IMG/VR virus record: IMGVR_UViG_3300033141_006329
Location: 62,001-126,000 of that record
Reading direction: 5' to 3' (one strand)
Length of the DNA: 64,000 bases
Positions 21,845-47,502 of this stretch are shown one piece after another (positions within the stretch are counted from its first letter, which is position 1; each line of letters begins with the position of its first letter). Under the pieces are notes generated by a model, which ran no database searches, was not told the DNA's origin, and saw only the letters and a list, made by a program, of their open reading frames with translations. Made by a program: the position numbers and the translations under genes.

Positions 21845-23101
21845 TTATTTCTCCTTTTCATTGCAGGTATCTCTCCACATGTTGTTAATATTTTCCACCA
21901 TATCTATTACATTCAAACTATCATAACACGGCGAATGTCCTTCTACTGCATGAGGACATTCTGAATATTTATGTAAACAGCACGGTGCGCAATCTGCCTT
22001 AGCATCCGTCCATTCACATTTCTTATATGTCTCTAATCTTATATAGCCTGGAAATGGCCCGTATATCCCATAAGTAGGAATCCCTAATGCAGATGCTATA
22101 TGAATCAATCCTGTATCCACAGATACTACCATGTTAGATAAATATGTCATAGCAGCAGCATATCCCATATGTTTAGAATAAGGACTAAAATCAAAACACA
22201 TTTGAGGTTTATCTGACTTCCATATTAAATCAGCTATCTTAATCTTTTGATCTGGTGCATCAACAAATACTACTGGGATATCATGGGCAAGTATCTCATT
22301 CAAAACTTGTAATTGAAATTCTGGGCGAGGCGTTCTCATTATTGTATTTGCTCTCAATTGTAGGATCATAAACTTTTCTTTTAATTCCCACTTATTAAGA
22401 ATGCTCTGAACATATTGTAAATTGTTTTTATCTGGATTTTGTATTGGATATAGTTCATCTTCTGGTATATCTAAGTTCACCCATCGAGCCAATACTCTAT
22501 AAATATTTGTTGTTTCTGCTTCCTTACATTTTCCTATAATGCCATCAAAATGAATATGATAATCAGCTGAGATAAAAGGTATTTCAGTACATGGTGTAGG
22601 ATATAAATTATCTAAAAAATCCCAAGATTTAGAGAAGTGATGATGTCTTGCTGGATGTGCAAATGCTAATTTACAGTTAGGATAAAGTTTTTTGATGTAT
22701 CGAAGAATTGGTTGAACAAACATACTATCTCCCATTCCTCCTCCATATTGCCACATTAATAATCTCTTTCCATTGAGATCCTCACCATTCCAGGGTTTTA
22801 GATTTTTTGTAAATCTATTTGTTGCTTTAAATATCTTTGAATGATATCCGTCAATAAATGATAAAAGATCTATCATGTAGCGTCTATCTTTCTTTATCTT
22901 CAACGTGTAACCATCTGTAAATTCTAATACTCTTGTTTTTCTTGGTTGTGTTATAACCATTTCTGGTGGCCTATTCCTAAATTCATCTAGGGTATTTACC
23001 TGTACGTTTTTTATAATTTCTGTATCATCTAATTCGTACCCTAGTTCTCTTATAATATTATTAGGTAGTATTTTTGGCCCTGAATCTAATGGGGTTTTCA
23101 T
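21845..23101 (-). CDS. GT9-family (ADP-heptose-type) glycosyltransferase with N-terminal extension
   Basis: WNGEDLNGKRLL...GGGMGD; VVSVDTGLIHIASALGIPTYGIYGP; C-terminal CAPC...C...C. Confidence 0.8.
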   Translation of the reverse strand: MKTPLDSGPKILPNNIIRELGYELDDTEIIKNVQVNTLDEFRNRPPEMVITQPRKTRVLEFTDGYTLKIKKDRRYMIDLLSFIDGYHSKIFKATNRFTKNLKPWNGEDLNGKRLLMWQYGGGMGDSMFVQPILRYIKKLYPNCKLAFAHPARHHHFSKSWDFLDNLYPTPCTEIPFISADYHIHFDGIIGKCKEAETTNIYRVLARWVNLDIPEDELYPIQNPDKNNLQYVQSILNKWELKEKFMILQLRANTIMRTPRPEFQLQVLNEILAHDIPVVFVDAPDQKIKIADLIWKSDKPQMCFDFSPYSKHMGYAAAMTYLSNMVVSVDTGLIHIASALGIPTYGIYGPFPGYIRLETYKKCEWTDAKADCAPCCLHKYSECPHAVEGHSPCYDSLNVIDMVENINNMWRDTCNEKEK

Positions 23102-23104
23102 TTT

Positions 23105-23281
23105 TTATTTTTTACTCCTTCTTCTATTATTCCTAAAACCACAATTTGGACATTTTTTATAATCTCCAACTAGCTGACAATCGCAACTCATGCACCAATA
23201 TTTATGAGGCCGCGGAGTCATAGTTACTTCTCTATTCGACTTTTTAAAATCTGTATCTTCTCTATATTTTTCTTTATACAT
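23105..23281 (-). CDS. Small Zn-ribbon protein (58 aa, not in ORF track)
   Basis: MYKEKYRE...WCMSCDCQLVGDYKKCPNCG... Confidence 0.6.
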   Translation of the reverse strand: MYKEKYREDTDFKKSNREVTMTPRPHKYWCMSCDCQLVGDYKKCPNCGFRNNRRRSKK

Positions 23282-23282
23282 A

Positions 23283-23522
23283 TTAATCGTCTGTCACATC
23301 AAACATACTTTTTATATCGTCAATATTTAGTTTATTTAGATCTTCCTCTTCTTCATTATCTACTGCATTGTTTAATACACCTATTGCCGTGTCGAATAAA
23401 TATATGGCTGCTTCAGGTTCAGAACAATCTAATTCTCTACTAAGTTCGACGATATAAGTATAAACATCCATAGGTATTCCTATTGTCATTTCCATTACTT
23501 GCTCGAATTTTTCCTTTAACAT
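23283..23522 (-). CDS. Hypothetical protein
   Basis: 79 aa, GAGAGG RBS. Confidence 0.55.
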   Translation of the reverse strand: MLKEKFEQVMEMTIGIPMDVYTYIVELSRELDCSEPEAAIYLFDTAIGVLNNAVDNEEEEDLNKLNIDDIKSMFDVTDD

Positions 23523-23531
23523 ATCCTCTCC

Positions 23532-28016: not shown

Positions 28017-28838
28017 TTATAAATTTTCTATTACTTTTGTCACTCTTATTGCACTATCAATATTGGTCTCAGCGTCGCCATTAAGGATATGCTTAAATTT
28101 CTCTACTGAGTTTTTCAGATATTCTGACCCATCGCCAGACGGTGAATGACTCAACCCATTATACATTTCTATAGTAACAGAGTCAATGTACCCATGATTA
28201 TATGTTACTCTCCCTTTCTCAAAAAAGAAAACAAATTCGAATTTATATTCTTTCATAGCATTTACTATTATATTTCCCATATCACCAACTATAACATCAT
28301 TGAAATAATTTGTATCTTTATCTTTAACAGATTTAAAACTCATCTTATCTACATCTGAAACTAAATCTATGACACTTAATACGTGGGAAGTAAGCAACCA
28401 ATTGCAGGATTCTTGGGGGTTTTCTACTATTTTACAACGGTGACAGGTTGTATATTTGAGTGGTCCTATTACATGATTTGTTAACCTTACTTGTTTTAAT
28501 ATATTTAATATAGGGGATGATTGCATTTGGTAATCTACATATAACTTTAATCCTTTTCTATTTGCTATATCTCTAAGTTCTTCAGCTTCTGCTGTGGTTT
28601 TTGCTATTGGTTTTTCCAGGAATACATGCTTACCAGCTTCTAAAGCTTTTTTAGCTATTTTGAAATGAGTAGGTATCGGGGTTGCTATAAAAACTGCTTC
28701 TATATCCTCTCTCAATAATATATTATCTAATGACTCTTCTTTCGTAGTGGTAATCAACTCAAAGTTTTTCTCTATGTAAGGGGTGAGAATATTCCCCCAC
28801 CTACCTGTGCCTATTAATGCTACTTTTATTTTATTCAT
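28017..28838 (-). CDS. Gfo/Idh/MocA-family NAD(P)-dependent oxidoreductase
   Basis: KVALIGTGRWG, VFIATP..THF..A..AL.AGKHVFLEKP. Confidence 0.85.
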   Translation of the reverse strand: MNKIKVALIGTGRWGNILTPYIEKNFELITTTKEESLDNILLREDIEAVFIATPIPTHFKIAKKALEAGKHVFLEKPIAKTTAEAEELRDIANRKGLKLYVDYQMQSSPILNILKQVRLTNHVIGPLKYTTCHRCKIVENPQESCNWLLTSHVLSVIDLVSDVDKMSFKSVKDKDTNYFNDVIVGDMGNIIVNAMKEYKFEFVFFFEKGRVTYNHGYIDSVTIEMYNGLSHSPSGDGSEYLKNSVEKFKHILNGDAETNIDSAIRVTKVIENL

Positions 28839-29743
28839 AATGTCTCCTTTAATTTTTCTTTGAAAAGATCAAATCTATTTTTAATACTATGATTTTCTAA
28901 TATAAATCTCATGGCCGAATTTCTTATTTTATCAAAATCATTTGGATTTTTCAATACCTCATCTAATTTGGAAAATAAATTATGTTTAGAAATTTCTATA
29001 TAATGTATATTTTTTCGAAAGCCCAATTTATCAAGATCGGGAGTTTCATTAGCTAACAAAAGTGAACCAGTAGCAGGAATTTCAAAATATTTACGAACCA
29101 CATAATCAAATTTTGACGAGGTAGTCAGACAGCAAAAATAAGTCCTTAAAGTTTTATAATAATCTATCCCTACTTTACTCTTATTTATATCTATTTTTGT
29201 ATAACCGGGATGTTTTAGGAATTCAATATGTTTATTATTCTGACTCAACGCAAAGTGTCTTAATGGATAGAAATTTTTATCAATGCAACCAGAAACTAAA
29301 CATTTCATAATTGGATTTTTATTAATATCAGAAAAAGAATGAGGAACAACAAAATGTGGAAACCATTGGTATTTATGGATAAACTCCGAATAATCTTTTC
29401 TAAATGCATAGTCATATGGACATAATATTAGATCTGCCCTTCTCATCATATTTTTGTAATTATTTTTAGTCTCATTGTTACCATGTATATCAGTATTATA
29501 AATTATTAATTTTTTATTCTTTGGGAGATTTAATAATCCTTTCATCAAATTTATTGCTCTTTTTCCATGTGGACACTTATATGTTATTATAATATCCTCA
29601 TTGATATCATGTGGATCATAATTATCAGCATAGACAATATTAAAACCAAATTCTTTTTTCAGCATCTCAAAAAAACAAATATATCTGCCTACTACTATAG
29701 GATTATCTTTAAATGTATTTGGTATTATAATTAATCCCTTCAT
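28835..29743 (-). CDS. GT-B glycosyltransferase (Glyco_trans_1_2/CgeB-like)
   Basis: VRKYFEIPATGSLLL...G.....HYI...IR......I...HS...R; paralogue of 31631..32542. Confidence 0.75.
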   Translation of the reverse strand: MKGLIIIPNTFKDNPIVVGRYICFFEMLKKEFGFNIVYADNYDPHDINEDIIITYKCPHGKRAINLMKGLLNLPKNKKLIIYNTDIHGNNETKNNYKNMMRRADLILCPYDYAFRKDYSEFIHKYQWFPHFVVPHSFSDINKNPIMKCLVSGCIDKNFYPLRHFALSQNNKHIEFLKHPGYTKIDINKSKVGIDYYKTLRTYFCCLTTSSKFDYVVRKYFEIPATGSLLLANETPDLDKLGFRKNIHYIEISKHNLFSKLDEVLKNPNDFDKIRNSAMRFILENHSIKNRFDLFKEKLKETL

Positions 29744-30883
29744 TTATTTCTTACCCTCGAAAATACTCTCATAAATAGTAGAAATTTCACAACCCATTCT
29801 ATTGCACCTTATACCCTTACTAAAGCATTTTTCATTACAACTAAATTCAGGATCATAATTTTTCATAATCATTTCTTTAAACTTCTCTAAATCGTCTGTA
29901 GCTTTTCCCAAACGACATTGGGGGGCTGTAGGTGTAGCTGCTGTTGAGCATTTGTATACATAACCATCAGCGCCATATGTGATCTGATAATAGCCGTAAG
30001 CGCATTTATTAAAGTTGAATTTGGTATCAATATCTGTAAACTCTGGTCCTGTATAGAATATGTACGGGCGCTCTTCTTTTGTCTCTGATAAATATTTCTT
30101 TAGTGCATCATAATATTGTTGAGAGCCTGTCACTTCTACTCTTTCTTTATATTCTCTTACTTCATCAAATGATTGATTGTAATTTGCAAATGGAATACTA
30201 AACCTGAGCGAGTCCACGCCTATATCTTTAGCAATTTTGACAATTTCTTGAAAATCCTCATGAGTACAACTGTGTGGTGAAATAAGATAACAAAGTCTGA
30301 TAGCATGTCCTTTATAGTTTTGAGACTTTCTTATGTATACAGCGTTCCTTATGCCTTTAACTATCTGATTAAATAATTCATAATTTTTTGAACCTTTAAC
30401 TTTGCACCATGATCTTGATGTTCCAGCATCTATACTTATAGATAAATAATCAGTAGGGTCAGAAATTCTATTCATTTCAGTAAGAACACCGTAATTATCC
30501 TCCAAATCTTTAAGCAAGATAGCATTGGTATGTATACCAAAATGATTATTATATTTTTTAGTCATTGCAAGAAAAGCCATAAAATAAGGATTTCCAAGTG
30601 GTTCTGTATAAGCGCCACCGTAGATATGATAAGGTATTTTGCCTTTTAATTTATCCATAAGCGATAGAGCATCTGCCTCCCAATGTCCCAACGCTTTATT
30701 GAATAATTTACCAGCACAATGACTACAATGCAACTGACAAGGCTGTTTATGATCGTTAGGCAAATGCACCTCCCATTGACGAGGCCAAACAAATTCTCCA
30801 GAGAACATTCTCTCAGGTTTATTATCTAAGTGTTTCATCAATTGTTTCCAGTAGAGGTATTCCTCAGGTCTCATATCAATCAT
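29744..30883 (-). CDS. Radical SAM protein with C-terminal Cys-rich (SPASM/twitch-like) domain
   Basis: CQLHCSHC (CxxxCxxC), GG.YTEP, TN, SIDAG; C-terminal C...GADG.VY.C...C...C...C. Confidence 0.8.
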   Translation of the reverse strand: MIDMRPEEYLYWKQLMKHLDNKPERMFSGEFVWPRQWEVHLPNDHKQPCQLHCSHCAGKLFNKALGHWEADALSLMDKLKGKIPYHIYGGAYTEPLGNPYFMAFLAMTKKYNNHFGIHTNAILLKDLEDNYGVLTEMNRISDPTDYLSISIDAGTSRSWCKVKGSKNYELFNQIVKGIRNAVYIRKSQNYKGHAIRLCYLISPHSCTHEDFQEIVKIAKDIGVDSLRFSIPFANYNQSFDEVREYKERVEVTGSQQYYDALKKYLSETKEERPYIFYTGPEFTDIDTKFNFNKCAYGYYQITYGADGYVYKCSTAATPTAPQCRLGKATDDLEKFKEMIMKNYDPEFSCNEKCFSKGIRCNRMGCEISTIYESIFEGKK

Positions 30884-30884: not shown

Positions 30885-31634
30885 TTATTTATTCTCCTTT
30901 ATACAAAAATTATCTAATATCTGTTTATTAGCTGGTTTGCCTCTAAACGAATTGTTAAGATTTTTATCATGTATCATTTGTAACCAAAAAGGACTACCAT
31001 TTCTGATTTGTTCAACTGTGAATAATCCATTCATCTTCCAGTGAACTATTCTAAAACAAGTTTTTAGATAATTTTCTGTCAGTGGTTCTATGACTGTGAT
31101 GTAGGGGTTTGGAGGGCGGGGGTAATCCAAGGTTGTTATACCTTTATTTTTTATATTATATATAGTTCCATTTATAGGATTTAATAATCGCTCCTTTGGT
31201 GAAAATTCTTCTTGCATTATTTTTATATAATTTTTATTTAAAGCATCGTCGCAATCTAATCTGGAGGTTATAATCCAATTAGTTTCTGGATTTAATTGTT
31301 CTTTTATCTTATTTGAAAACCACTGATACATGGTGAATCTCTCATAGTTTTCATAATCTATGTATATAGGGATCATTCTATCATATTTTTCTAATAAATT
31401 TTTATTAGTATGATTCTCATCAAATAAAACCATCCATTTGAAATTTTTATTGGTCTGTCCTGCTATCGATGGATAACAATATTTATCGAAAAGCCTTAAT
31501 CGATGTTTAAACCATTCGTCTGTAGGCATATCTTCATGATTAGGTCTTTTAAGTTTTCTCCCTGTTATACATTTTGACCATTGCATGTAAACATTAAATT
31601 GCGTCAAAAGGAAATGTTCGAATTGTATACTCAT
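30885..31634 (-). CDS. Putative glycosyltransferase (GT-A, putative rhamnosyltransferase-like)
   Basis: HFLLTQFN, W..HRL.LF..YC.PSI..QTN.NF.W.VLFD, ITSRLDCDDAL. Confidence 0.7.
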   Translation of the reverse strand: MSIQFEHFLLTQFNVYMQWSKCITGRKLKRPNHEDMPTDEWFKHRLRLFDKYCYPSIAGQTNKNFKWMVLFDENHTNKNLLEKYDRMIPIYIDYENYERFTMYQWFSNKIKEQLNPETNWIITSRLDCDDALNKNYIKIMQEEFSPKERLLNPINGTIYNIKNKGITTLDYPRPPNPYITVIEPLTENYLKTCFRIVHWKMNGLFTVEQIRNGSPFWLQMIHDKNLNNSFRGKPANKQILDNFCIKENK

Positions 31635-38466: not shown

Positions 38467-38832
38467 GATAAAACTTCCCGCCATCACTTTTTCTTTTTTC
38501 TTTTTGATGGGTTATTCTGATTTGCTTTATCTGATTCACCTCGTCGCCGAGGCAAATCGATTCTCTTTTCATAGGAGGTCTATCTCCGCCCATAAATATA
38601 AAAATAAACCTTCCATAATATAATTATAAAAAGAAATTCACATCCTCATTAACCCTTTCCCTCAATACCCAAATCAAAAATATCTAGCGCAAAATTATAA
38701 TGTTTTATCCTCAACAATTTGGGTCAATTTACTTACGGTTTTTTCGCCACAGCTTCTCAGTATCCTGAGCTACTATTCCCGCCGCGAAGGTAGAATATAA
38801 AGTTATTCGCGCCCCGCAAAAATGATGTGGAA

Positions 38833-38864
38833 CAAAGGGCATACGACAGATCGCATACCCTTTG
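38833..38864 (-). terminator. Stable hairpin downstream of the 131-aa gene (terminator-like)
   Basis: CAAAGGGTATGCGA-TCTG-TCGTATGCCCTTTG on the minus strand; U-tract weak. Confidence 0.55.
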
Positions 38865-38882
38865 CAACGAATTGAATATGTG

Positions 38883-39327: not shown

Positions 39328-39591
39328 TTACTTATCTCCTACTTCTTTTTGTTTCCTCAATATTTCCCACTGCTTTAATGCGACTGGTTTCTTTGTCCAT
39401 TCATTAGGATTTCCTTCACTAGATGCTGCAAAAGTTATTTCCAATGTATGTTCCTCAATATTAACATTTGGTACACCAAATGCAGTATTATCATCAGTCT
39501 TGATATAGTTATCATCTAACCAATCCCATAAATCCTGTAGGGGAACTATTACCTTTCCTTCGTAGATTCTAGCCATTAAATTGTTACCCAA
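39328..39591 (-). CDS. Hypothetical protein
   Basis: 87-aa ORF; probable start at MARIYEG. Confidence 0.55.
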   Translation of the reverse strand: MGNNLMARIYEGKVIVPLQDLWDWLDDNYIKTDDNTAFGVPNVNIEEHTLEITFAASSEGNPNEWTKKPVALKQWEILRKQKEVGDK

Positions 39592-40652
39592 CCTCCCTTA
39601 ACTTTTCGTGTCTTCTTTAACTTTTTCTGTAGCCTTTGAAACTTCAAAGTATCATTGTTCCTAAGAGAATTACCTGGCTCTGTTGTTGCTATCTTTATAA
39701 TATCTTCAGAGGTATTAGTCCAGGTTCTATATTTTTTAACAAATTCTAAACCACTCCTTGCTATTGCTTCTCGTTCATCATCATGCTTCAAATAATATTC
39801 CACTGCATTATTTAGTGCTATTATATTCTTAAATTCTACAATGTCTCTTTTATCTTTCATGTCCATTAATTCTTCCATTTTTGGAATACGTTTGGTTAGA
39901 ACCATTGATCCACACGCCATGCAATTCCATAATCTCAAAGATGTATAACCAGGATAATTTCCTCTACTGATGTTTAATACCAATTTACTTTGTGAACATA
40001 TTTTTCTGAATTCATCGGGTTCGACAAAACTAGTATAGTGGGGTCCAAAGAATTTTACATTGTAGTTTTTCTTCCTTAAAAAATCATAAATAGTGGTCCT
40101 CTCAGGATCAGCTGCACCTATAAAAATTACATCATATTTCTTTTTAGTTAGTTCTGGATAATATTTATCAGGATCTGTTCCATCGAATACATGATAAACT
40201 GGCATTTGTGCACTATTGCTCCAGAGCAAAGCAGTTCCATACCCAGTAGCACTTCTATATGCACAAAATCTTGAAGACTCAAATAATGATTTATTTTTAA
40301 AATGGGAATATACATCAGGCATCCAAAAATATAATCTGCAATTCATTTTGGACATTTGAAAAGTATGTAAAGGTATACCATTACCCTTCATTATTATAAT
40401 TAGATCACAAGTTCTAGATAGTTCCATAACATTATTTATAACAGCACTAATATTCCTTTTAAGAGCAGTTCTATAATCTAATCTTATAACTTCACTTACT
40501 GAATCCAATCTTTCCATATGATTTGCAAATGGTATGGATGATGATGCTGGATTATTAAATACCCCTGCGAATCCTACTTTTAAGGGTAATTGTAAGGGAT
40601 TTTCTACCTCTATATCTCTACCTAAAATACTTGGAGTTACTTTCCTGATCAT
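39576..40652 (-). CDS. CgeB-like GT-B glycosyltransferase (Glyco_trans_1_2)
   Basis: YDVIFIG...ER, SK.VLNISR, SLRLWNCMACGS.VLT, YYL.HD.ERE.IA..G. Confidence 0.8.
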   Translation of the reverse strand: MIRKVTPSILGRDIEVENPLQLPLKVGFAGVFNNPASSSIPFANHMERLDSVSEVIRLDYRTALKRNISAVINNVMELSRTCDLIIIMKGNGIPLHTFQMSKMNCRLYFWMPDVYSHFKNKSLFESSRFCAYRSATGYGTALLWSNSAQMPVYHVFDGTDPDKYYPELTKKKYDVIFIGAADPERTTIYDFLRKKNYNVKFFGPHYTSFVEPDEFRKICSQSKLVLNISRGNYPGYTSLRLWNCMACGSMVLTKRIPKMEELMDMKDKRDIVEFKNIIALNNAVEYYLKHDDEREAIARSGLEFVKKYRTWTNTSEDIIKIATTEPGNSLRNNDTLKFQRLQKKLKKTRKVKGGWVTI

Positions 40653-41578
40653 ATTTCTAACTCCACAGTTGCACAGAGAGGAGCATCTTTTGAACCTGCT
40701 TTATCTTTATGTTTCCTTAAAAATCTAATCATCTTGTCAGGATCTTTTTTGGTAGCATAATATATTCTCCTGTTCTCTAATCTATATTGACCGTTTATCC
40801 ATTTGTCCTTTTTAACGTGGCTGACGGGATGATATAAGTGGTTAATAGTCCAGGGGAACATATCATAAGATTTAAACATATGAGATGCTCTAAGGGCCAT
40901 CTCGTTGTCTATACCTCCGAGTTCTTGGAACCCCTCATTGGCACCTCCCATCTCCCAATAAGCAGTTTTATTATAATACAAAATTCCCCCCTCAGCCATA
41001 CCCCGGGTAGGTTTAGATACTCGTATCTTCTTGCTGAATGTTTCATCCCAGTATACTATTTCAGACCAAGCAAAGAACCATCGTTTCACCTTATTCTTTG
41101 GTCGTTTTTTAGCAAATTTATATAGCTCAGTAAAGTAGTTTAAATCCACACAAATATCTCCTTCTCCCATCAACAAATGCCCAGTCTTAGCATTTCTTAC
41201 TCCTACATTGAAAAGCCACCCCTTATTAAAAATGGGATATCTGACTAATATTTTTGTTATGTTTTTATTTGCAGGAATTCTTATATTATTAGAATATAGA
41301 GGAAGTGTAGGATCTAGCATTTGTTCTACGATTATAAGATGTATATTTTGGGGTATTACTCGTACTATAGATTCTAAGTTCCTAAGTCGATATTCGAATC
41401 CGTCATTATTCATATTGCATACGGGTATAATGAAATCCATATTGAGATTAATTTTCCCCCCATATATTCTATTATATTCATCCACTGAGGGATGGTCGGT
41501 TTTCACGTTTATATGTTTTAGAAGCCCAAGTTCTGATACACAGACTTTTCCGCATACTTTACATTCTATTTTAGCCAT
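40649..41578 (-). CDS. GT-A glycosyltransferase (GT2/GT7C-like) with N-terminal C2H2-type Zn finger
   Basis: CKVCGK..S..GL..HI....H; FIIPV, FNKGWLFNVG, EGD, GG.NE.F...GG.D.E. Confidence 0.75.
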   Translation of the reverse strand: MAKIECKVCGKVCVSELGLLKHINVKTDHPSVDEYNRIYGGKINLNMDFIIPVCNMNNDGFEYRLRNLESIVRVIPQNIHLIIVEQMLDPTLPLYSNNIRIPANKNITKILVRYPIFNKGWLFNVGVRNAKTGHLLMGEGDICVDLNYFTELYKFAKKRPKNKVKRWFFAWSEIVYWDETFSKKIRVSKPTRGMAEGGILYYNKTAYWEMGGANEGFQELGGIDNEMALRASHMFKSYDMFPWTINHLYHPVSHVKKDKWINGQYRLENRRIYYATKKDPDKMIRFLRKHKDKAGSKDAPLCATVELEI

Positions 41579-42483
41579 TTTTTCTCCTCCAATATTTCAA
41601 ATACCTTTTTAGGTGTTGTTGTTTTATAATCCAGATCATCAAGAAATGTACACTTGGTCTTAAAAGGATTTTCTTTTACACGGTGTCTTATATTCTCATG
41701 TCCCCACAGAATTGTTGGAGTTCCCAGTAAATTTGATAAGATAGGTAATGAAGATTGACTCCCTATAGTAACCTTAGTCCGTCTCATAATTTCAATTGTT
41801 AAACCTATATCAGACAGATCATTTAGAGTTTCAACATATTTTTCTAATACTATAAAATTAGGATTTCTTGGAGGATGAACTATAGTCGGAGAAATGCCAG
41901 CTATAAATACTATATATTTTTCACTCTTACTAAACAAGTTGAATAAATCATACCAATATTCATCAGGCCAATTCCTATCAATATCTACACTCCTTAAATC
42001 CATTCTTTTTCTTGGGCATAATACTACAGGAATTTTATCCTTGTTTTTCTCTATAAATATATCTGCGAGTTTTTTATTAGCTGAGTGAGGTGTAAAATTG
42101 AAGTCCATTTTATCAAATGGAAAAATATTCCTTTTATTTCCTTTAGGTGGCTCGATTAATTTATGATGAGGAAATTCTTTTCTGATCTTGTCTATAATCA
42201 TCTGATACTTTTCATCAGGGAAAAAATCTAGACGATACATATTTGGTCTGTATATGTTATAGTCACCATTAATTGTAATAGTCATAATTCCATCTACAGC
42301 ACCATAATACAAATCACTACGTTCTTTCCTAGTAACAACAATAACATTTTTTTCAGGGTAGGTCTTTTTGAACCATCTCACATACCCACAAAATCGAATT
42401 AGTTCCCATCCCAATTCTCCAAAAAATGCGAATACTACTTTTTCTTGTTTTAATAACAATCTTAAATATTCTGATCTGATCAT
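41566..42483 (-). CDS. GT-B glycosyltransferase, GT9-like
   Basis: FFGELGWEL N-motif; TIGSQSSLPILSNLLGTPTILWG C-motif. Confidence 0.6.
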   Translation of the reverse strand: MIRSEYLRLLLKQEKVVFAFFGELGWELIRFCGYVRWFKKTYPEKNVIVVTRKERSDLYYGAVDGIMTITINGDYNIYRPNMYRLDFFPDEKYQMIIDKIRKEFPHHKLIEPPKGNKRNIFPFDKMDFNFTPHSANKKLADIFIEKNKDKIPVVLCPRKRMDLRSVDIDRNWPDEYWYDLFNLFSKSEKYIVFIAGISPTIVHPPRNPNFIVLEKYVETLNDLSDIGLTIEIMRRTKVTIGSQSSLPILSNLLGTPTILWGHENIRHRVKENPFKTKCTFLDDLDYKTTTPKKVFEILEEKKWLK

Positions 42484-44258
42484 AATCGATTTATTAACTC
42501 CTCAAATATTTCCGGTATTGGTAGTTTGGGTTTTGTAGAATGCACAGCTACTCTAGCCATTGAATCCGACCGATTTATATCCAGAGAATTTGAACTATGA
42601 TCAATCACAATAGAATTCTTTTTCAAAGCCCAGCAGATATGAACAGCATCAGAATCAGATGGCACAATAACTAAACTACAAGTATTTAAAATACCAGCAG
42701 CTACAGGATCAGATACATTATTTATTATCTTAATATTTTTCCTAATTTTAAATCTCTCAATCTGGGCAGGGTCTAACCTAGTTGTCTCTCCACCCATAGA
42801 TAATAATAAAATAGTATTAGCTCGATCATTAGCTAATCTGGAACATACAATACTCAAATCTTTCCATATAGTATGTTTATCATTTTTACAAGTAGATATA
42901 ATTATGGCTGTAGTTTGAGGATGTATATATCCCTTATAAGGAGTAAAATTACAGTAGGGTTCAGGTACATGTTCAATACACGGATCTACAACTGAATAAT
43001 TTTTCTCTGCTGTGTATTTACTTAAGTTGAGAGGTTCTATAATATCTAAATCCTTAGGTAATTTTATATTATAACTACTGGTAGTTTTTATTATATTAGG
43101 ACCATACTTACAAAAATTTGTCATTCCGTTGTGAAAATCATCTATCTTATATACCTTATCCACCATAGAATTTCGTATCAAAGAAACCGCAGGATTTAAT
43201 ACATCATTTGTTACTATATCTACAGAACCATATTTTTTATATATCCCTTTTATAAGAGGAGTTATATTCAGTAATGCCTTTGTATCAGAATTAACAACCA
43301 ATAATATCCTAAAATTTTTATCGAATTCCAATTCTCCATTTTTAAATGTTATTTCAGTTATATCACCCATGTCTTCTTCTTCGGTTTCTATACTATCGAT
43401 ATCATCATCCATAGAATATAAATTTATCTTTGCCCGTCTTTTAAGTTTCCAATAAGGCAGTAAATCTTTACCTCTTCTCATACATCCTATTTTCGAAGCA
43501 TCACCCCACTCAACACTATAATTACTAGGTATGAATATGGAATGTTCTGTTTTCTTTTTAAACTGAGCAACATTTTTAAGATCTCTATCTTCTAGATTAT
43601 TTGTATCTCGCCTTTTTCTTAAACATAGACCTTTATTTTTTACTGAAATTCGTTCCTCAAGACCGGTGGCTTTTAATTGATTTATGAGATGTAGTCGTGA
43701 ATATTCTGAAAATAATTCCTCTTCCAACCCACATTCTAATTCCACTATATGTTTAACTTTTGCTATAACTATAGGACTGTATATGTTTTTCTTTTTTTGC
43801 CATTCTATTCTTTTAATCCTGGAAAAATAAGCACTATGAAATTTACTATCATTTTTTAAAATTTTAAGAGGATTACTTGAATCATCAAACATGGTGGGAA
43901 CAGTTATGAATTCCTTCTCCCAATCTATGCCTAAGAATTCCTTTGCTATAATTTGATGAGGGCTCATGATAGTCCAACCATCTGTTATGACGACTGTTGC
44001 AAAAGGATAATCTGTAGCTATTTGTTTAAGAAGTGTATTGATAGTTAAAGAATAATTATAGGCGGTGGATTGTATAGACATAATATTTTCAGATTCTTCA
44101 GGTATACAATGTTTTATTTTATTTGTGGATCTTCCCATCATACATACATGCATATCACATTCAATTAGTTTATGAGCAAAAACCGTAGGTAACATAGATA
44201 TAAAATCTGGCCTACATTCATCGCTATTAATACCTACGACGGCGTGGATAACTTCCAT
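42480..44258 (-). CDS. Two-domain glycosyltransferase (GT-A-like N half plus GT9-like C half)
   Basis: N: VVITDG, GLEEEL; C: NITPLIKGI.KKY..VDIV, GIL..CSLVIVPSDS..VHI..AL.K. Confidence 0.6.
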   Translation of the reverse strand: MEVIHAVVGINSDECRPDFISMLPTVFAHKLIECDMHVCMMGRSTNKIKHCIPEESENIMSIQSTAYNYSLTINTLLKQIATDYPFATVVITDGWTIMSPHQIIAKEFLGIDWEKEFITVPTMFDDSSNPLKILKNDSKFHSAYFSRIKRIEWQKKKNIYSPIVIAKVKHIVELECGLEEELFSEYSRLHLINQLKATGLEERISVKNKGLCLRKRRDTNNLEDRDLKNVAQFKKKTEHSIFIPSNYSVEWGDASKIGCMRRGKDLLPYWKLKRRAKINLYSMDDDIDSIETEEEDMGDITEITFKNGELEFDKNFRILLVVNSDTKALLNITPLIKGIYKKYGSVDIVTNDVLNPAVSLIRNSMVDKVYKIDDFHNGMTNFCKYGPNIIKTTSSYNIKLPKDLDIIEPLNLSKYTAEKNYSVVDPCIEHVPEPYCNFTPYKGYIHPQTTAIIISTCKNDKHTIWKDLSIVCSRLANDRANTILLLSMGGETTRLDPAQIERFKIRKNIKIINNVSDPVAAGILNTCSLVIVPSDSDAVHICWALKKNSIVIDHSSNSLDINRSDSMARVAVHSTKPKLPIPEIFEELINRL

Positions 44259-44267
44259 AATTTCTCC

Positions 44268-45182
44268 TTACCAAACTGTGGCGGCGGTTAAATGTTTATA
44301 TTTGTCATATATTTGCTTTGCGGATAAATTCCTAAGAGATAGTTCTTTATCTTCTAGGGTATGTTTTGTTCTTCTATATACGTCAGGACCTTGTCTTGTA
44401 AGAACATTACACATAGACGATTGTAGGACTTCCCCAACATGAAGGACGAGAGGATCATCATCTTTTGGGGGTTTGACCCCAGCTACGAAATTAATAATTC
44501 CCTTACGTCTTTTTATCATGAACCAGCTGGTTGAATCTTGTTTTTTGTAACAATTATAAGTTTTTACAAGCTCTTCAGATTCCCATTCTAACATCAGTAA
44601 CTGATTGTAATCAAAGAACCAAAAACAACTGCCCCCTCCCCAGGAACTGGAAATACAACCGAACTCTTCACCATCTACATTAAAGGTATAATTGTTGGTC
44701 ATTGGATTATCACGAGCTATTTTTGGTATACCCCCTGGTGCTTTTACAATATAATGGGTGTTAGGTTCTAAGGTTTTTAATTCTTGATGTGCATTCAGGA
44801 AATATTTATCCCAGCCCCTTCCAAGAATAACATCGTTATCTATAAGAACATAATAATCATTCATTGTTTCTGTCTTTGTGAGATGACGGACGTCGTGGGC
44901 GGTTTTCATCATTTGTGTCCACCTATGAAATGATGATGCTTTGCCAAAACAATTATTGAGAGAAGTAGAGGTATCATAGGAATAATATTTAATTTTTCCA
45001 TCCTTTAATAATTTTGCGAATATAGCAAATCTTTCAGGGGATGGTAAGGATAAGTTATCAAAAACGTAAATATCTATATCGCGGAATAATGAGGTTGTTG
45101 TGAGGATAGATTCTATAGTTTTTTGTGTTAATACTGATCTGTCTCTTGCTGTCAACATCACTGATAATCTGTTATTAATCAT
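44268..45182 (-). CDS. GT2-like glycosyltransferase
   Basis: LSVMLTARDR..LT.KTIESI, VFDN.S, YYVLIDNDVIL (DxD); start moved to MINNRL (GAGGGG RBS). Confidence 0.7.
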   Translation of the reverse strand: MINNRLSVMLTARDRSVLTQKTIESILTTTSLFRDIDIYVFDNLSLPSPERFAIFAKLLKDGKIKYYSYDTSTSLNNCFGKASSFHRWTQMMKTAHDVRHLTKTETMNDYYVLIDNDVILGRGWDKYFLNAHQELKTLEPNTHYIVKAPGGIPKIARDNPMTNNYTFNVDGEEFGCISSSWGGGSCFWFFDYNQLLMLEWESEELVKTYNCYKKQDSTSWFMIKRRKGIINFVAGVKPPKDDDPLVLHVGEVLQSSMCNVLTRQGPDVYRRTKHTLEDKELSLRNLSAKQIYDKYKHLTAATVW

Positions 45183-45212
45183 ATAGTCCCCCTCGTTCAT
45201 TTTTAATGTTTT

Positions 45213-45222
45213 TAGTTTGTCC
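45213..45222 (-). promoter_or_regulatory. Class 2 element upstream of the GT2 operon
   Basis: gaataaaGGACAAACTAAAAAC. Confidence 0.55.
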
Positions 45223-45251
45223 TTTATTCCATAAAAAGTTCCAGAGAAAAC

Positions 45252-45275
45252 CCACACCATCAAGCGGACAAATTA
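45252..45275 (+). promoter_or_regulatory. Class 1 element at the strand switch, upstream of the GT9-queC-hldE operon
   Basis: CCACACCATCAAGCGGACAAATTA. Confidence 0.7.
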
Positions 45276-45372
45276 AAAACGTGATAAATTAGAAATAATA
45301 TGTGGCATCTGGATTTTTTGATTACAAAGAGGACAAACATATAAAGAAACATTTTAAAGAAAGGGGCAAAAT

Positions 45373-46635
45373 GTGAGGAAACCAAATAAATCTAGTATAA
45401 AAAATAAAATGGGGATTAACCCCAACGAACTACGAAAGGTAAACACAGTAAAAGAATTAATATCAAAGCCACCATTTTTTATTCTTGCCAAAGTAGTGAC
45501 GGGCTGTTCAATAGGCGGAGGCCCAAATGGGCGGGCAGTTAAATTAGAAAAGGGAAGTGTCGTAACAATGGCATTAGGAGCATTCTTCACAGCTTCTAGA
45601 TCAAAAGACCGCAGGGTCCTCTTGAAGCCATATAAGAGGAAATTCGCAGATGTATTCAAAAGATATTATGGTCAAAATCTCGATGGTAAAAATATATTGT
45701 TCCTGAGGGGCGGCGGCTTTGGAGATTTGTTATTTCTTCAACCCATAATGAAAGAACTAAAAAGATTATATCCTACCTGCACAATTACGGTAGCATGTTT
45801 TACAAGATTTATCGATATATTATCAAGTTTCCCAGAAGGTCTTATAGATTACGTTACGCCCGTACCTGTCAATTTAGAAGTCTTAAAATTCAATGATTAT
45901 CACTTTATTGTAGAGGGCATCATAGAACGATGTACAGCCGCTGAAAAAGAAGTTTGTTATGACTTAATGGCGCAAGCTTCAGGTTTAGATATAGATTTCT
46001 CTTCTATGGATCAGATAATAGAATTAGTTCCTGACAAAAAACTCGTGAAAGAACTATCTCCAATTCTTCCAGGTAATTTTGTAGTAGTTCAAGCCAGAGC
46101 ATCTTCACCGATACGCATGATGCCAGATTCCGCGTGGGCCTCTATTATCAAGAAGATAGGTGCCCTTGGGAAGAAAGTTGTATTGTTAGATAGACCTGAA
46201 AATGAGAAATTATATACAGACTTTATAGAGCATAATGATCTTAAAGATATTGCAATAAATTTAGCAAGTAAGTGCCTGACAATTAATCATGCGATAGCTA
46301 TTGCGAGTATGTCGGATGGAGTTGTGTGTATAGACAGTGCCTTTTCGCACATAGGAGCAGCACTAGGAAAGCCAGTATTAGGTCTTTACGGTGCATTTAA
46401 AGGTGAACTGCGTATGAAGTATTATAAGAATGCTGATTGGGTTCAAGGCGAACCTACATGTAAAAAAGGTAAACCTTGTGCAGCACATCATGAAAGAAAG
46501 TTCAAATGCGAATCCTTCAAAGCAAAAGGATATCCAGATTGTATGGCAAATATAGATGAGGACGAAGTCATGGAAAAATTCAAAAAATTATTTATAAAAG
46601 AAGAGGAGACAACTGATGGAAGAGACGACGTATAG
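45373..46635 (+). CDS. GT9-family (ADP-heptose-type) glycosyltransferase, paralogue of 21845..23101
   Basis: GQNLDGKNILFLRGGGFGDLLF; VCIDSAFSHIGAALGKPVLGLYG; C-terminal C...PC..H...C...C. Confidence 0.8.
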   Translation: MRKPNKSSIKNKMGINPNELRKVNTVKELISKPPFFILAKVVTGCSIGGGPNGRAVKLEKGSVVTMALGAFFTASRSKDRRVLLKPYKRKFADVFKRYYGQNLDGKNILFLRGGGFGDLLFLQPIMKELKRLYPTCTITVACFTRFIDILSSFPEGLIDYVTPVPVNLEVLKFNDYHFIVEGIIERCTAAEKEVCYDLMAQASGLDIDFSSMDQIIELVPDKKLVKELSPILPGNFVVVQARASSPIRMMPDSAWASIIKKIGALGKKVVLLDRPENEKLYTDFIEHNDLKDIAINLASKCLTINHAIAIASMSDGVVCIDSAFSHIGAALGKPVLGLYGAFKGELRMKYYKNADWVQGEPTCKKGKPCAAHHERKFKCESFKAKGYPDCMANIDEDEVMEKFKKLFIKEEETTDGRDDV

Positions 46636-46855
46636 GGAATTTTTAGAAAGGTTTAAAATAGAGTTTGGGGATTTTATAAGACTCGCAGAGACAGGAAAAA
46701 CAGTTCGTTATTCTGCCCTGAAAGCTAGGAAAAAATCAATTCAACTAAGAAATATGTTAAAGGATTTTAGGGGCTATTCATTAACAAACGATAAGAGGAT
46801 ATCCGAAATATTATCCGAAGCCAAAATAAAGATTAGGTCGGAGGTAACAGGCTAA
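46616..46855 (+). CDS. Histone H1-like (Hc1-type) small basic protein
   Basis: A.KARK.S..L...LK.FR..SL motif. Confidence 0.55.
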   Translation: MEETTYREFLERFKIEFGDFIRLAETGKTVRYSALKARKKSIQLRNMLKDFRGYSLTNDKRISEILSEAKIKIRSEVTG

Positions 46856-47502
46856 TGAATAAATTAAATAACAACCTAGAATATTGGGAAGGCAGGCATC
46901 ACGATATGACTAATGAGCGTATAGTGGGCCGTATCGACTGGACCCGAGCAGAATATTATAAAGAGTTAGCTAGATGGTCATCCATAATAGAACCGCTCCT
47001 ATCACAAGTACAGCTCCCACGATCATCTAACAATAGTACCGTTCTCGACATTGGTTGTGGAGTAGGCAGATGGGTTCCGCTTCTATCAAAATATTTTACA
47101 GATTATTATGGGTGTGATATCACAGATAATGCTATAGAAAAAACACGAAAAGCCGTAGCTGATACAGGACTAAACTATGTAGTTGAGAAGATAGTAGATA
47201 ATGTGTTACCCTTTAAAAATATAAAATTCGATCTAGTATGGACATGTGTAGTCCTCCAGCACATTGTTGATAAAGAATTATTAGAATACTATGCACAACA
47301 GATATCCTATGCAGTAAAGCCAGAGGGTTATTTATTAATTACAGAAAATATAGCTGAATGTAAGGATAGTCATTATATGAATTTTCGATCAGAATCTTAT
47401 TACAAAGAATTATTTACAAGTGTAGGATTCAATATAATAGATACTAAATACATAGAAGAAAGAGAACAACATGCTTCGATGCTGTTCAGGAAGGAGGCAT
47501 AA
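46855..47502 (+). CDS. Class I SAM-dependent methyltransferase
   Basis: VLDIGCGVGR, GCDI, FDLVW...VLQHI, LKPxG-like VKPEG. Confidence 0.85.
   Translation: MNKLNNNLEYWEGRHHDMTNERIVGRIDWTRAEYYKELARWSSIIEPLLSQVQLPRSSNNSTVLDIGCGVGRWVPLLSKYFTDYYGCDITDNAIEKTRKAVADTGLNYVVEKIVDNVLPFKNIKFDLVWTCVVLQHIVDKELLEYYAQQISYAVKPEGYLLITENIAECKDSHYMNFRSESYYKELFTSVGFNIIDTKYIEEREQHASMLFRKEA

What the first reader, a model, noticed from the sequence alone, without database searches (positions are those of the whole stretch)
21845..47502. About ten glycosyltransferases of at least four families in one phage segment
Seen: 21845, 28835, 30885, 31631, 39576, 40649, 41566, 42480 (two domains), 44268 and 45373, plus a methyltransferase. 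They form three clusters interleaved with core replication genes, several preceded by the phage-specific motif, so they look like domesticated phage genes rather than one captured host locus. There are no flippase, Wzy or other membrane export genes, which argues against a serotype-conversion cassette and for a cytoplasmic substrate such as virion protein or DNA (inference).
Basis: partly seen in the sequence, partly recalled or inferred. Interest (0 to 1): 0.6.

Follow-up and report, generated by a model that had tools for sequence, protein, structure and literature searches.

The report
Conserved glycosyltransferase module in jumbo phage
An uncultured phage of about 306 kb carries ten sugar-adding enzyme genes plus sugar-activating genes that are inherited together with its DNA-replication genes, so the phage builds its own, probably heptose-containing, glycan on a target (virion protein, DNA or host envelope) that is still unknown.

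Summary
All ten loci encode glycosyltransferases (GTs), 11 GT domains in at least four families: four GT9-like domains, three PF13524/GT4-like, one PF11316, and three or four GT-A. Sugar-pathway genes accompany them: an HldE-like heptose kinase/adenylyltransferase, a GFO/IDH/MocA dehydrogenase, a radical-SAM enzyme and a methyltransferase.

The window lies in a 223-kb IMG/VR record of a 306,137-bp JGI contig. It resembles the recently described "moraphage" lineage, whose authors already noted four core GT orthogroups.

The six-gene block 39576-46635 keeps its gene order in at least four related phages. Its proteins diverge about as much as PolB (35-55% identity against 52%), and their nearest homologues are almost all viral. 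None of the ten GTs has a predicted transmembrane segment, and no protein in the 223 kb looks like a flippase or polymerase. "Domesticated phage genes" is therefore supported.

The target is not settled.
- Virion proteins are favoured (about 0.4). The five-GT operon has a late-type promoter motif, and the 420-aa GT9s carry TibC-like accessory features.
- DNA (about 0.2) and host envelope (about 0.25) remain live.

Ten or more GTs in a phage is not unprecedented: one cyanophage has 13.

The parts
21845..23101 (-). GT9 paralogue 1 (418 aa). It lies downstream of clamp loader and primase, with no motif of its own.
   Evidence: PF01075, 28.2 bits. It is 27% identical over its full length to 45373-46635. 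Orthologues at 59% identity lie on the same 46.5-kb contig as L008. No promoter motif lies between it and 26275.
28017..28838 (-). GFO/IDH/MocA-type NAD(P) sugar dehydrogenase (accessory cluster 2).
   Evidence: PF01408, E 1.6e-19. Weak NCBIfam hits to xylose, inositol and UDP-GlcNAc 3-dehydrogenases.
28835..29743 (-). PF13524 (GT4/CgeB-like) GT, cluster 2.
   Evidence: It is 42% identical to 31631-32542.
29744..30883 (-). Radical-SAM enzyme inside cluster 2. Its role as a sugar modifier is inferred.
   Evidence: PF04055. The orthologue next to GT2/Rhamno_transf in relatives also shows a weak B12-binding hit.
30885..31634 (-). PF11316 'putative rhamnosyl transferase' GT.
   Evidence: E 4.7e-17. 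It is 46% identical to an L005 gene.
31631..32542 (-). PF13524 GT, paralogue of 28835.
39576..40652 (-). PF13524 GT, last GT gene of the five-GT operon (core; a small ORF, 39328-39591, follows).
   Evidence: E 9e-21. It is 51% identical in L005 and L008.
40649..41578 (-). GT-A (GT2/GT7-like) with a conserved N-terminal C2H2-like zinc-finger motif.
41566..42483 (-). Short GT9-like GT (305 aa).
42480..44258 (-). Two-domain protein (592 aa). The C-terminal half is GT9-like. The N-terminal half is tentatively GT-A.
44268..45200 (-). Lineage-specific GT-A with an invariant DND motif. First gene of the five-GT operon.
45214..45274 (.). Divergent promoter-like region. A late-type GGACAAACT motif (45214-45222, minus strand) faces the five-GT operon. 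A motif with a CCACAC box (45266-45274, plus strand) and a variant at 45331 face the GT9 gene.
   Evidence: GGACAAA copies face both sides of the same intergenic region in L008; L005 and L022 each have an exact copy on the five-GT side and only variant copies facing GT9.
45373..46635 (+). GT9 paralogue 2 (420 aa). It has a WaaF-like catalytic core, an extra N-terminal domain of about 105 aa and a conserved Cys4/His motif.
46616..46855 (+). 79-aa basic protein, possibly histone H1/Hc1-like. It is the best-conserved gene of the block.
   Evidence: 64-65% identity in L005 and L008. It holds the only Hc1 match in the genome, which is below threshold (E 0.0075).
46855..47502 (+). SAM-dependent methyltransferase (accessory; absent in L005, L008 and L022).
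47505..48290 (+). Divergent QueC-like PP-loop ATPase, conserved beside GT9 in all relatives.
   Evidence: PF06508, 28.7 bits. TIGR00364, E 4.6e-6..
48265..48804 (+). Conserved 179-aa protein of unknown function.
   Evidence: 50-56% identity in L005 and L008. No family hit.
48780..50261 (+). HldE-like bifunctional heptose-7-P kinase / heptose-1-P adenylyltransferase (accessory).
   Evidence: NF008454, E 7e-133, full length. Domain II scores 192.7 bits against a cut-off of 181.5. phrog_7878. Absent in L005 and L008.
16795..17712 (-). Divergent thymidylate-synthase homologue. It is context for the DNA-modification rival, not shown to belong to the module.

Best explanation
The segment encodes the phage's own soluble, cytoplasmic glycan-building system.

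A core of six GT genes sits at a divergent promoter region next to the replication genes. On one side is the five-gene operon 45200->39576. On the other is the 420-aa GT9 at 45373. A second 420-aa GT9 lies at 21845.

This core is inherited vertically in a lineage of jumbo phages of about 200-307 kb that resemble moraphages. Accessory genes vary between relatives: the sugar-modifying cluster 28017-32542, the methyltransferase, and HldE.

Inferred mechanism:
- HldE tops up ADP-heptose, with the host supplying the isomerase and phosphatase steps.
- The four GT9-type domains add heptose.
- The GT-A and GT4-like enzymes add other sugars. Some of these are oxidised, rearranged or methylated by the dehydrogenase, radical-SAM enzyme and methyltransferase.
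- The result is an oligosaccharide of several residues.

The most likely acceptor is a phage structural protein, for example the Ser/Thr-rich repeat fibres encoded in the same window. It would be glycosylated in the cytoplasm before assembly, as in mycobacteriophages and giant viruses.

Shown: the GT identities, the conservation, the absence of exporters, and the motif classes. Inferred: the heptose donor, a single common glycan, the timing, and the acceptor.
For: - GT assignments.
- HldE.
- Vertical inheritance and synteny.
- Viral nearest neighbours.
- Soluble proteins and no exporters.
- Timing. The five-GT operon is headed by a GGACAAACT motif without the upstream CCACAC box. This is the form found before the tail sheath, baseplate hub and 1914-aa protein genes. 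L005, L008 and L022 each keep an exact GGACAAA copy on the five-GT side of the same intergenic region.
- Architecture of the 420-aa GT9 family. It has an extra N-terminal domain of about 105 aa and a conserved C-x5-C-x2-H...C...C motif near the C-terminus. This recalls TibC, the cytoplasmic protein O-heptosyltransferase, which has an N-terminal beta-barrel (residues 1-97) and a four-Cys iron finger (PMC4358343).
- TibC gives the longest structural alignment: 293 residues, model 66-412 against TibC 9-393, Z 22.1, compared with Z 24.3 for WaaF.
- A BFVD entry from an uncultured phage is named 'Glycosyltransferase Aah/TibC'.
- Candidate substrates lie in the window: S/T/G/D-rich repeat fibre-like proteins at 1-2992 and 11587-15282.
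- Precedent: virion glycosylation in mycobacteriophages, as cited in PMC12619734.
Against: - No direct evidence of any glycoprotein.
- By sequence the GT9 catalytic domain is closest to LPS heptosyltransferase II (profile E 1.4e-21). TibC is not found at E<=10. The spacing of the Cys motif differs from TibC's.
- GT9 45373 carries the replication-type motif with the CCACAC box. GT9 21845 and cluster 2 lie in operons headed by that motif, so not all GTs look late.
- That the two motif forms are temporal classes is inferred from downstream gene functions only.
- The GTs lie beside replication genes, not inside the structural module.
- HldE is missing in relatives, so heptose supply by the phage is not essential.
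Confidence: 0.4

Rival explanations
1. DNA hypermodification. Some or all of the GTs put sugars, including heptose, on modified bases of the phage DNA after replication to evade restriction. The base precursors would come from the divergent thymidylate-synthase homologue, from a 7-deazaguanine pathway, or from both.
For: - GT9 45373 opens the operon that runs through an H1/Hc1-like protein, a QueC-like enzyme, an exonuclease and PolB. It has the same CCACAC-box motif as the clamp-loader and purD genes.
- The GT9 + small basic protein + QueC-like unit is conserved in every relative seen.
- QueD is present (112 bits) beside two radical-SAM genes. A QueE-like radical-SAM gene lies next to PolB.
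- The ThyA homologue at 16795-17712 keeps the catalytic Cys and the dUMP-type Asn. It matches only the core of the family and ends about 40 positions early.
- The GT-A at 40649 has a conserved C2H2-like zinc finger.
- Phage GT-B enzymes combined with heptose-activating enzymes are known to make mono- and di-heptosyl 5hmC in DNA (bioRxiv 10.1101/2023.12.21.572611).
Against: - Ten GTs is far more than any described DNA glycosylation pathway uses. Those read here use one to a few sugars.
- No TGT/DpdA and no GTP cyclohydrolase I was found in the 223 kb.
- No Tet/JBP hit was found, but that search's controls did not ring either.
- The ThyA homologue may simply make dTMP.
- T4 beta-glucosyltransferase is not among the top 50 structural matches of the GT9 model.
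- The five-GT operon has the structural-gene type of motif.
Confidence: 0.2
2. Host-envelope remodelling. The GTs act on host lipid-linked acceptors (lipid A-core or undecaprenyl-linked glycans) at the inner face of the membrane. Host transporters export the product. This changes the cell surface during infection, for superinfection exclusion or to keep progeny from readsorbing. It is the usual reading of cyanophage 'LPS' gene clusters.
For: - The GT9 catalytic domains are closest in sequence and structure to WaaF, WaaC and a Veillonella GT9.
- HldE is the LPS-core heptose activation enzyme.
- By established knowledge of the LPS pathway, core GTs need no dedicated exporter.
- Cyanomyoviruses with up to 13 GTs plus KDO and NDP-sugar genes are interpreted this way (PMC12801897).
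- Most of the GTs are basic, with pI 8.7-9.5, as peripheral membrane GTs often are.
Against: - The genes are core and syntenic, and they diverge like PolB. Surface-modifying genes are typically found in variable islands.
- Homologues are nearly all viral and never seen in a waa- or O-antigen-like locus.
- No equivalog-level match to any LPS heptosyltransferase (58.8 bits against a cut-off of 134.6).
- The extra N-terminal domain and the Cys motif are absent from WaaC and WaaF.
- No initiating phosphoglycosyl transferase and no membrane protein of that kind.
Confidence: 0.25
3. Not one system. The three clusters serve unrelated purposes, for example one DNA-directed GT9 unit, one late glycan operon, and an accessory sugar-metabolism island acquired separately. 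The count of ten is a by-product of a very large genome.
For: - Cluster 2, the methyltransferase and HldE are absent or moved in relatives.
- The clusters lie behind different motif forms.
- A further, unrelated GT lies elsewhere: a TreT-like trehalose synthase at G000 213077-214282.
Against: - In L005 and on the P0011 contig, cluster-2-type genes abut the five-GT operon directly. This suggests functional linkage.
- GT9-type domains occur in clusters 1 and 3. They could share HldE's product.
Confidence: 0.15

Closest known systems
'Moraphages', a lineage of large aquatic phages (Perez-Hernandez et al., Arch Virol 2025, PMC12619734)
   Same: Genome size: up to 307 kb there, and a 306,137-bp contig here. 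A homologue of the 44268 protein lies on a 307,088-bp contig. There are DnaJ-domain proteins and a possible H1/Hc1-like protein. Replication genes are only distantly T4-like. The paper reports four putative GT orthogroups among those it examined when describing the core genome.
   Different: The paper only lists the GT orthogroups and cites generic roles. It gives no family assignment, synteny, heptose link or promoter analysis. I could not place this genome in their tree because their sequences were not on hand. This phage may instead be nearer the marine-sediment 'ERM' phages they mention. One marine-sediment run holds 18% of the sampled words.
Cyanomyovirus cell-envelope/'LPS' gene clusters (P-SSM2, S-SCSM1, S-SCSM2R; PMC12801897)
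   Same: Ten or more GTs of several families, plus sugar-nucleotide enzymes, in one large marine phage and without exporters. S-SCSM2R has 13 GTs in at least seven families.
   Different: No detectable sequence relation: tblastn of the GT9 and of the 592-aa protein against 50,697 phage records found nothing. The GT families differ: GT9-rich here, and GT10, GT11, GT25 and others there. Here the genes are core, syntenic and next to replication genes.
BAHT family of protein O-heptosyltransferases (TibC/Aah; PMC4358343)
   Same: A GT9-type GT-B core presumed to use ADP-heptose. Similar length: 420 aa here against 406 aa for TibC. An extra N-terminal domain of about 100 residues. A four-Cys metal-finger-like insertion near the C-terminus. 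Soluble and cytoplasmic. Z 22.1 over 293 residues.
   Different: No detectable sequence similarity to TibC, whereas WaaF scores E 1.4e-21. The Cys spacing differs and a conserved His is added. [quoted passage not shown] There is no autotransporter substrate.
Phage DNA glycosylation gene clusters (Pyle et al. 2024; T-even alpha/beta-GT; RB69/DLP3 arabinosyl-5hoC, PMC13326640)
   Same: Phage GTs paired with sugar-activating enzymes. Heptose and Kdo can be put on DNA. There is an association with thymidylate-synthase homologues and replication genes.
   Different: Those pathways use one to three GTs of T4-beta-GT-like GT-B or JGT/TarP-like GT-A type. They lie beside a C5-methyltransferase plus 5mYOX, or beside a ThyA homologue. 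Here there are ten GTs, mostly GT9 and PF13524, and the ThyA homologue lies about 4 kb from the nearest GT.
Virion glycosylation in mycobacteriophages and giant viruses (Freeman et al. 2023, as cited in PMC12619734; the PBCV-1 capsid GT appears as a structural match)
   Same: Virus-encoded soluble GTs act in the cytoplasm on structural proteins. Giant viruses use many GTs and methyltransferases to build complex glycans.
   Different: Mycobacteriophages use two to four GTs placed next to structural genes. No heptose system is described there. Nothing here shows glycoprotein directly.

Membership tests
Pfam PF01075 / CAZy GT9 (heptosyltransferase family) | Significant match to the family model | tested here: met
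   45373: 51.2 bits. 21845: 28.2 bits. The cut-off is 22. 41566 matches through a profile-profile comparison (95%). 42480 C-terminal half: 61%, E 8e-5.
Pfam PF01075 / CAZy GT9 (heptosyltransferase family) | GT-B fold closest to solved GT9 enzymes | tested here: met
   Model pLDDT 89.8. VIA Z 24.4 (3tov), 24.3 (WaaF) and 21.7 (WaaC). The next unrelated GT-B scores Z 13.
LPS heptosyltransferase I/II/III (WaaC/WaaF/WaaQ equivalogs) | Score above NCBIfam equivalog cut-off | tested here: not met
   The best is TIGR02195 at 58.8 bits against a cut-off of 134.6. All others are lower.
Pfam PF01075 / CAZy GT9 (heptosyltransferase family) | Use of ADP-heptose as donor | not testable with these tools
   Inferred from family membership and the co-located HldE.
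BAHT (TibC/Aah) protein heptosyltransferases | Detectable sequence relation to TibC/Aah | tested here: not met
   The profile of 26 homologues finds WaaF, 3tov and WaaC but not TibC at E<=10.
BAHT (TibC/Aah) protein heptosyltransferases | N-terminal beta-barrel of about 97 aa before the catalytic domain | tested here: inconclusive
   An extra domain of about 105 aa, with five short strands, precedes the GGGxGD motif. The VIA alignment to TibC starts at model residue 66 against TibC residue 9. The domain was not folded and searched alone.
BAHT (TibC/Aah) protein heptosyltransferases | Four-Cys iron finger inserted in the C-lobe | tested here: inconclusive
   C363, C369 and H372 are invariant. 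C379 and C389 are present in all the representatives examined, although their alignment columns fall in a gapped stretch. The spacing differs from TibC's C339/C342/C358/C370. The metal is unknown.
HldE (bifunctional heptose-7-P kinase / heptose-1-P adenylyltransferase) | Both domains in one protein with family-level scores | tested here: met
   NF008454 covers positions 4-473 of 475 at E 7e-133. Its 443.6 bits are below the 521 equivalog cut-off. Domain II scores 192.7 against 181.5. Domain I scores 321.7 against 345.
Serotype-conversion / O-antigen or EPS locus | Flippase, polymerase, ABC permease or initiating phosphoglycosyl transferase nearby | tested here: not met
   The hydrophobicity scan of all 324 ORFs of the 223-kb record found none with the 6 to 12 segments expected of such proteins. 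The last 83 kb of the JGI contig were not seen.
Serotype-conversion / O-antigen or EPS locus | Nearest homologues form a syntenic cellular locus | tested here: not met
   The contexts of homologues are phage replication modules or small-ORF viral-like contigs. A scan of bacterial genomes could not be run.
Phage DNA-glycosylation gene cluster | GT next to a base-hydroxylating or hydroxymethylating enzyme (ThyA homologue, or C5-MT + 5mYOX) | tested here: inconclusive
   A divergent ThyA homologue lies about 4 kb from GT9 21845. There was no Tet_JBP hit, but that search's controls were silent. C5-MT was not searched.
Phage 7-deazaguanine DNA modification system | DpdA/TGT transglycosylase together with FolE, QueD, QueE and QueC | tested here: not met
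   QueD is present. QueE-like and QueC-like genes are weak. No TGT and no GTP cyclohydrolase I was found in the 223 kb. Divergent DpdA, or genes in the unseen 83 kb, are not excluded.
Moraphage lineage | Genome of 200-307 kb with DnaJ, an H1-like protein and several core GT orthogroups | tested here: met
   The H1-like hit is weak only.
Moraphage lineage | Placement inside the clade in MCP, TerL and PolB trees | not tested

The most novel reading that the evidence does not exclude
The conserved unit of GT9 + small basic DNA-binding-like protein + divergent QueC-like enzyme, helped by the other GTs and HldE, builds a heptose-containing glycan directly on a modified base of the phage DNA. The base would be a 7-deazaguanine derivative or 5-hydroxymethyluracil. 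This would be a new class of DNA hypermodification made by GT9-type enzymes.
Probability: 0.1. Interest if true: 0.85.

Novelty: new variant of a known kind. Interest (0 to 1): 0.5.

Why it matters
Phage-encoded glycosylation is known in three forms: DNA, virion proteins and host surface. For environmental jumbo phages the target is almost never known.

Here the GT genes are not a variable island. They are a core, syntenic module that has co-diverged with the DNA polymerase across a whole lineage, which implies an important role in the phage's own life cycle.

The module is GT9-rich and comes with an HldE gene. The two large GT9s carry accessory features reminiscent of cytoplasmic protein heptosyltransferases. 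That gives concrete, cheap experiments: co-expression with fibre proteins, nucleoside MS, and metal analysis.

If virions or DNA prove to be heptosylated, it would extend heptose biology beyond LPS and autotransporters. It would also matter for phage immune evasion and receptor masking.

Tried and rejected
- Megablast of both GT regions against 50,697 phage records: no match.
- tblastn of GT9 45373 and of the 592-aa protein against the same collection: no match.
- PHROGs: no hit at E<=0.001 for nine of the ten GTs; 40649 has one borderline hit (E 0.00096) to a family of unknown function.
- NCBIfam: only weak sub-threshold hits for the GTs.
- The search for related loci in viral contigs: nothing for the GT9, and one remote locus, L004, for 39576 that was not followed.
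- Sequence and profile searches of PDB for 41566, 42480, 44268 and 40649: uninformative.
- hhalign of the 42480 N-terminal half against the 40649 family: no relation.
- Reaching the 83 kb of the JGI contig beyond the IMG/VR record failed. The record is not held for the genome search, and an exact-protein look-up of a terminal ORF found nothing.
- tRNA and Rfam scans of the window and of the 1.3-kb gap: nothing.
- The Tet_JBP search is uninformative because its controls did not ring.
- Considered and rejected: a classical temperate-phage serotype-conversion cassette. There is no Wzx, Wzy or Gtr-type membrane protein, and the genes are core to a lytic-looking jumbo phage.
- Considered and rejected: recent capture from a host. 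GC and GC3 are ameliorated and the nearest neighbours are viral.
- Not run: complex prediction, because no binding claim is made, and read laying. No other genetic code was used.

Full report
**What the window is.** The window is bases 62,001-126,000 of a 223,370-bp IMG/VR record labelled 'provirus', which CheckV rates 71% complete. The same genes lie on a 306,137-bp JGI metagenome contig, at nearly the same coordinates. The IMG/VR record is therefore the first 223 kb of that contig, and its last ORFs still look phage-like. GC content is about 33%. No cultured phage is close: megablast finds nothing. PolB is about 30% identical to PolB of T4-like and other large phages, and the portal protein is only weakly like those of jumbo phages. 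One marine-sediment run holds 18% of the sampled words of the GT region. Three features fit the 'moraphage' lineage described in 2025: the size, DnaJ-domain proteins and a possible H1/Hc1-like protein. That paper reports genomes up to 307 kb, predicted Bacteroidota hosts, and four putative GT orthogroups among the orthogroups examined for its core genome (PMC12619734). A homologue of one GT studied here sits on a 307,088-bp contig. I could not test placement in their trees.

**The observation.** All ten loci are intact ORFs.
- Six pass Pfam's curated cut-offs: two GT9, three PF13524 and one PF11316.
- 40649-41578 is a GT-A. It has 341 representative homologues, and a third of the 60 scanned hit Glyco_transf_7C or GT2 models. 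Its orthologues keep an N-terminal C2H2-like zinc-finger motif.
- 41566-42483 is a short GT9-like protein (hhalign 95% against the GT9 profile; Atlas TM 0.81 to viral 'GT9' clusters).
- 44268-45263 probably starts at the ATG at 45200. It belongs to a family of only 19 proteins in 5.8 billion. It folds with pLDDT 88.8 into a GT-A (406 Foldseek PDB hits at E<=1e-3; Atlas GT2 clusters). It has an invariant DND motif.
- 42480-44258 has a GT9-like C-terminal half with moderate support. The GT-A reading of its N-terminal half rests only on language-model and Atlas evidence.
- 21845 and 45373 are full-length paralogues (27% identity), as are 28835 and 31631 (42%).

That makes ten genes, eleven domains and at least four families. 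No other GT9 or GT2 Pfam match exists in the 223 kb. A TreT-like GT4 lies in the structural region.

**Companion genes.**
- 48780-50261 is a full-length HldE-like enzyme (E 7e-133; the adenylyltransferase domain is above its cut-off).
- 28017 is a GFO/IDH/MocA dehydrogenase, 29744 a radical-SAM enzyme and 46855 a SAM methyltransferase.
- No recognisable GmhA or GmhB was seen among the proteins scanned. The 179-aa ORF between the QueC-like gene and HldE has no family hit.

**No export machinery.** A hydrophobicity scan of all 324 ORFs found no protein with the many membrane spans of Wzx, Wzy, WaaL, ABC permeases or initiating transferases. None of the GTs has a segment above the threshold. Their GC and GC3 lie close to the genome's range (most within one SD, all within about 2.5 SD).

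**Conservation.** Orthologues of GT9 45373 (38-55% identity) lie on contigs of 26-98 kb. In L005, L008 and L022, and on the contig of P0011, the gene order is the same. One side reads PF13524 GT, GT-A, short GT9, 592-662-aa protein, GT-A. The other side, transcribed divergently, reads GT9, small basic protein, QueC-like, 18x-aa protein and onward to PolB. Identities of the GTs (35-55%) equal that of PolB (52%). In L010 (PolB 39%) only the GT-A + GT9 + small protein + QueC-like unit remains. GT9 21845 also has orthologues, including one at 59% on the L008 contig. Three elements are accessory:
- Cluster 28017-32542. A related set abuts the five-GT operon in L005, and it is absent in L022.
- purD.
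- The methyltransferase and HldE.

More distant GT9 homologues also sit among small ORFs with other GTs or methyltransferases, not in cellular waa or O-antigen loci. One is filed under an Asgard MAG, probably through binning.

**Promoter-like motifs.** GGACAAAYT occurs 23 times in the window against 1.4 expected and 50 times in the record, mostly 20-110 nt upstream of starts. Two forms separate.
- One has an upstream CCACAC box and reads ...ACTGGACAAATTAAAAAC. It stands before the clamp-loader, purD, DUF488 and 665-aa genes, and before GT9 45373.
- The other lacks the box and reads ...ATAAAGGACAAACTATAAAC or ...CTAAAAAC. It stands before the tail sheath, the baseplate hub, the 1914-aa protein and other structural-region genes.

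The five-GT operon is headed by the second form (45214-45222). GT9 45373 also has a variant of the second form at 45331. L005, L008 and L022 keep an exact GGACAAA copy on the five-GT side of the same intergenic region; L008 also has exact copies facing GT9, and L005 and L022 have only variant copies there. Reading the two forms as early/middle and late classes is my inference.

**The large GT9s.**
- The model of 45373 (pLDDT 89.8) is a GT9 fold. VIA Z is 24.4 (3tov), 24.3 (WaaF), 22.1 (TibC) and 21.7 (WaaC), and the next family scores 13.
- By sequence profile WaaF is clearly closest (E 1.4e-21), and TibC is not detected.
- The family nevertheless has two things that WaaC and WaaF lack and that TibC has in analogous places. 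One is an extra N-terminal domain of about 105 residues. The other is a conserved four-Cys (plus His) motif near the C-terminus (TibC features from PMC4358343).
- TibC gives the longest alignment and reaches into the N-terminal domain.
- BFVD holds an uncultured-phage protein named 'Aah/TibC' among the matches.

This is a resemblance in architecture, not membership.

**Leads toward DNA.**
- A divergent ThyA homologue (16795-17712) keeps the catalytic Cys and the Asn. It matches only the core of the family, has a zinc-ribbon insert and ends early.
- QueD is present beside two radical-SAM genes. A QueE-like gene lies next to PolB, and the QueC-like gene lies next to GT9.
- No TGT/DpdA and no FolE was found in the 223 kb.
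- Phage GTs are known to put heptose, Kdo and other sugars on 5hmC and arabinose chains on 5hoC.

**Weighing the explanations.** It is well supported (about 0.85) that this is a phage-inherited, soluble, multi-enzyme glycan-building module. The acceptor is open.
- Virion proteins, 0.4. In favour: the late-type motif on the five-GT operon, the TibC-like accessories, S/T-rich repeat fibre-like proteins in the same window, and precedents in mycobacteriophages and giant viruses.
- Host envelope, 0.25. In favour: the WaaF-like cores, HldE, and the fact that no exporter is needed.
- DNA, 0.2.
- Several unrelated functions, 0.15.

**Novelty.** Large GT sets in phages are known. One cyanophage has 13 GTs, and the moraphage paper already flags GT orthogroups. 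New here are the family assignments, the GT9-rich composition together with HldE, the conserved synteny and co-divergence with PolB, the split between core and accessory genes, the two motif forms, and the TibC-like features.

**Limits.** There is no experimental evidence. 83 kb of the genome was not seen. The temporal classes are inferred. The N-terminal domain of the GT9 was not folded alone. Read laying and complex prediction were not used. Only table 11 was used.

Noticed in passing
window 37504-38882: A stretch of about 1.3 kb with no ORF above 50 aa, between two gene blocks. It carries two GGACAAAYT copies pointing the opposite way (37609+, 38082+). No tRNA and no Rfam match above noise.
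   Followed up: partly
window 53049-55577 (+): The family-B DNA polymerase carries an N-terminal uracil-DNA-glycosylase-like domain. PF03167 appears in the precomputed Pfam lists for this gene and for its orthologues in L005, L010 and L022.
   Followed up: no
G000 5556-7812 (outside window); window 47505-48290 and 55845-56639: A partial 7-deazaguanine gene set. QueD (112 bits, with a 100-aa N-terminal extension) lies beside two radical-SAM genes. A QueE-like radical-SAM gene lies next to PolB. A divergent QueC-like gene lies next to GT9. No TGT/DpdA or FolE was found in the 223 kb.
   Followed up: partly
window 16795-17712 (-): A divergent thymidylate-synthase homologue. The catalytic Cys and Asn are kept. 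It has a zinc-ribbon insert at residues 195-217, and only model positions 144-226 match. The ORF ends about 40 positions before the end of the family model. It may be a hydroxymethylase-type enzyme or a split gene.
   Followed up: partly
window 1-2992 (-, starts upstream of the window) and 11587-15282 (-): Two large paralogous fibre-like proteins (1051 and 1231 aa), rich in Ser, Thr, Gly and Asp, with internal tandem modules 35-52% identical. Smaller proteins at 3119-3598 and 15520-15987 share their end segments.
   Followed up: partly
G000 212281-214282 (outside window): A TreT-like trehalose synthase (PF21269, E 1e-49, plus Glycos_transf_1) lies next to an M24 methionine-aminopeptidase-like gene. 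Both are in the structural region and follow a late-type motif.
   Followed up: no
whole record; window 26275, 27965, 36774, 45266 and others: Two forms of a GGACAAAYT promoter-like motif, with or without an upstream CCACAC box, separate replication-type from structural-type genes. The core GGACAAA recurs in related phages.
   Followed up: yes
window 20068-21841; G000 143-155 kb and 185-191 kb: Long arrays of small (about 90-150 aa) paralogous ORFs in tandem, with no family assignment.
   Followed up: no
whole record: IMG/VR calls the record a 'provirus' and ends it at 223 kb. The JGI contig runs to 306 kb, and the ORFs at the cut still look phage-like. The trimming is probably an artefact.
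   Followed up: partly
window 36764-37117 (-): A DUF488-N3a ('active subclade') protein with its own CCACAC-box motif, between the GT cluster and the 665-aa gene.
   Followed up: no
window 26673-27920 (-): A complete purD (GARS, all three domains, E 2e-69). It is an accessory metabolic gene with its own replication-type motif and is absent from relative L022.
   Followed up: no
protein P0208 (homologue of 21845-23101): A 49%-identical GT9 homologue on a 5-kb contig is filed in NCBI under a Candidatus Heimdallarchaeaceae MAG. It is probably a viral contig binned with a sediment archaeon.
   Followed up: no
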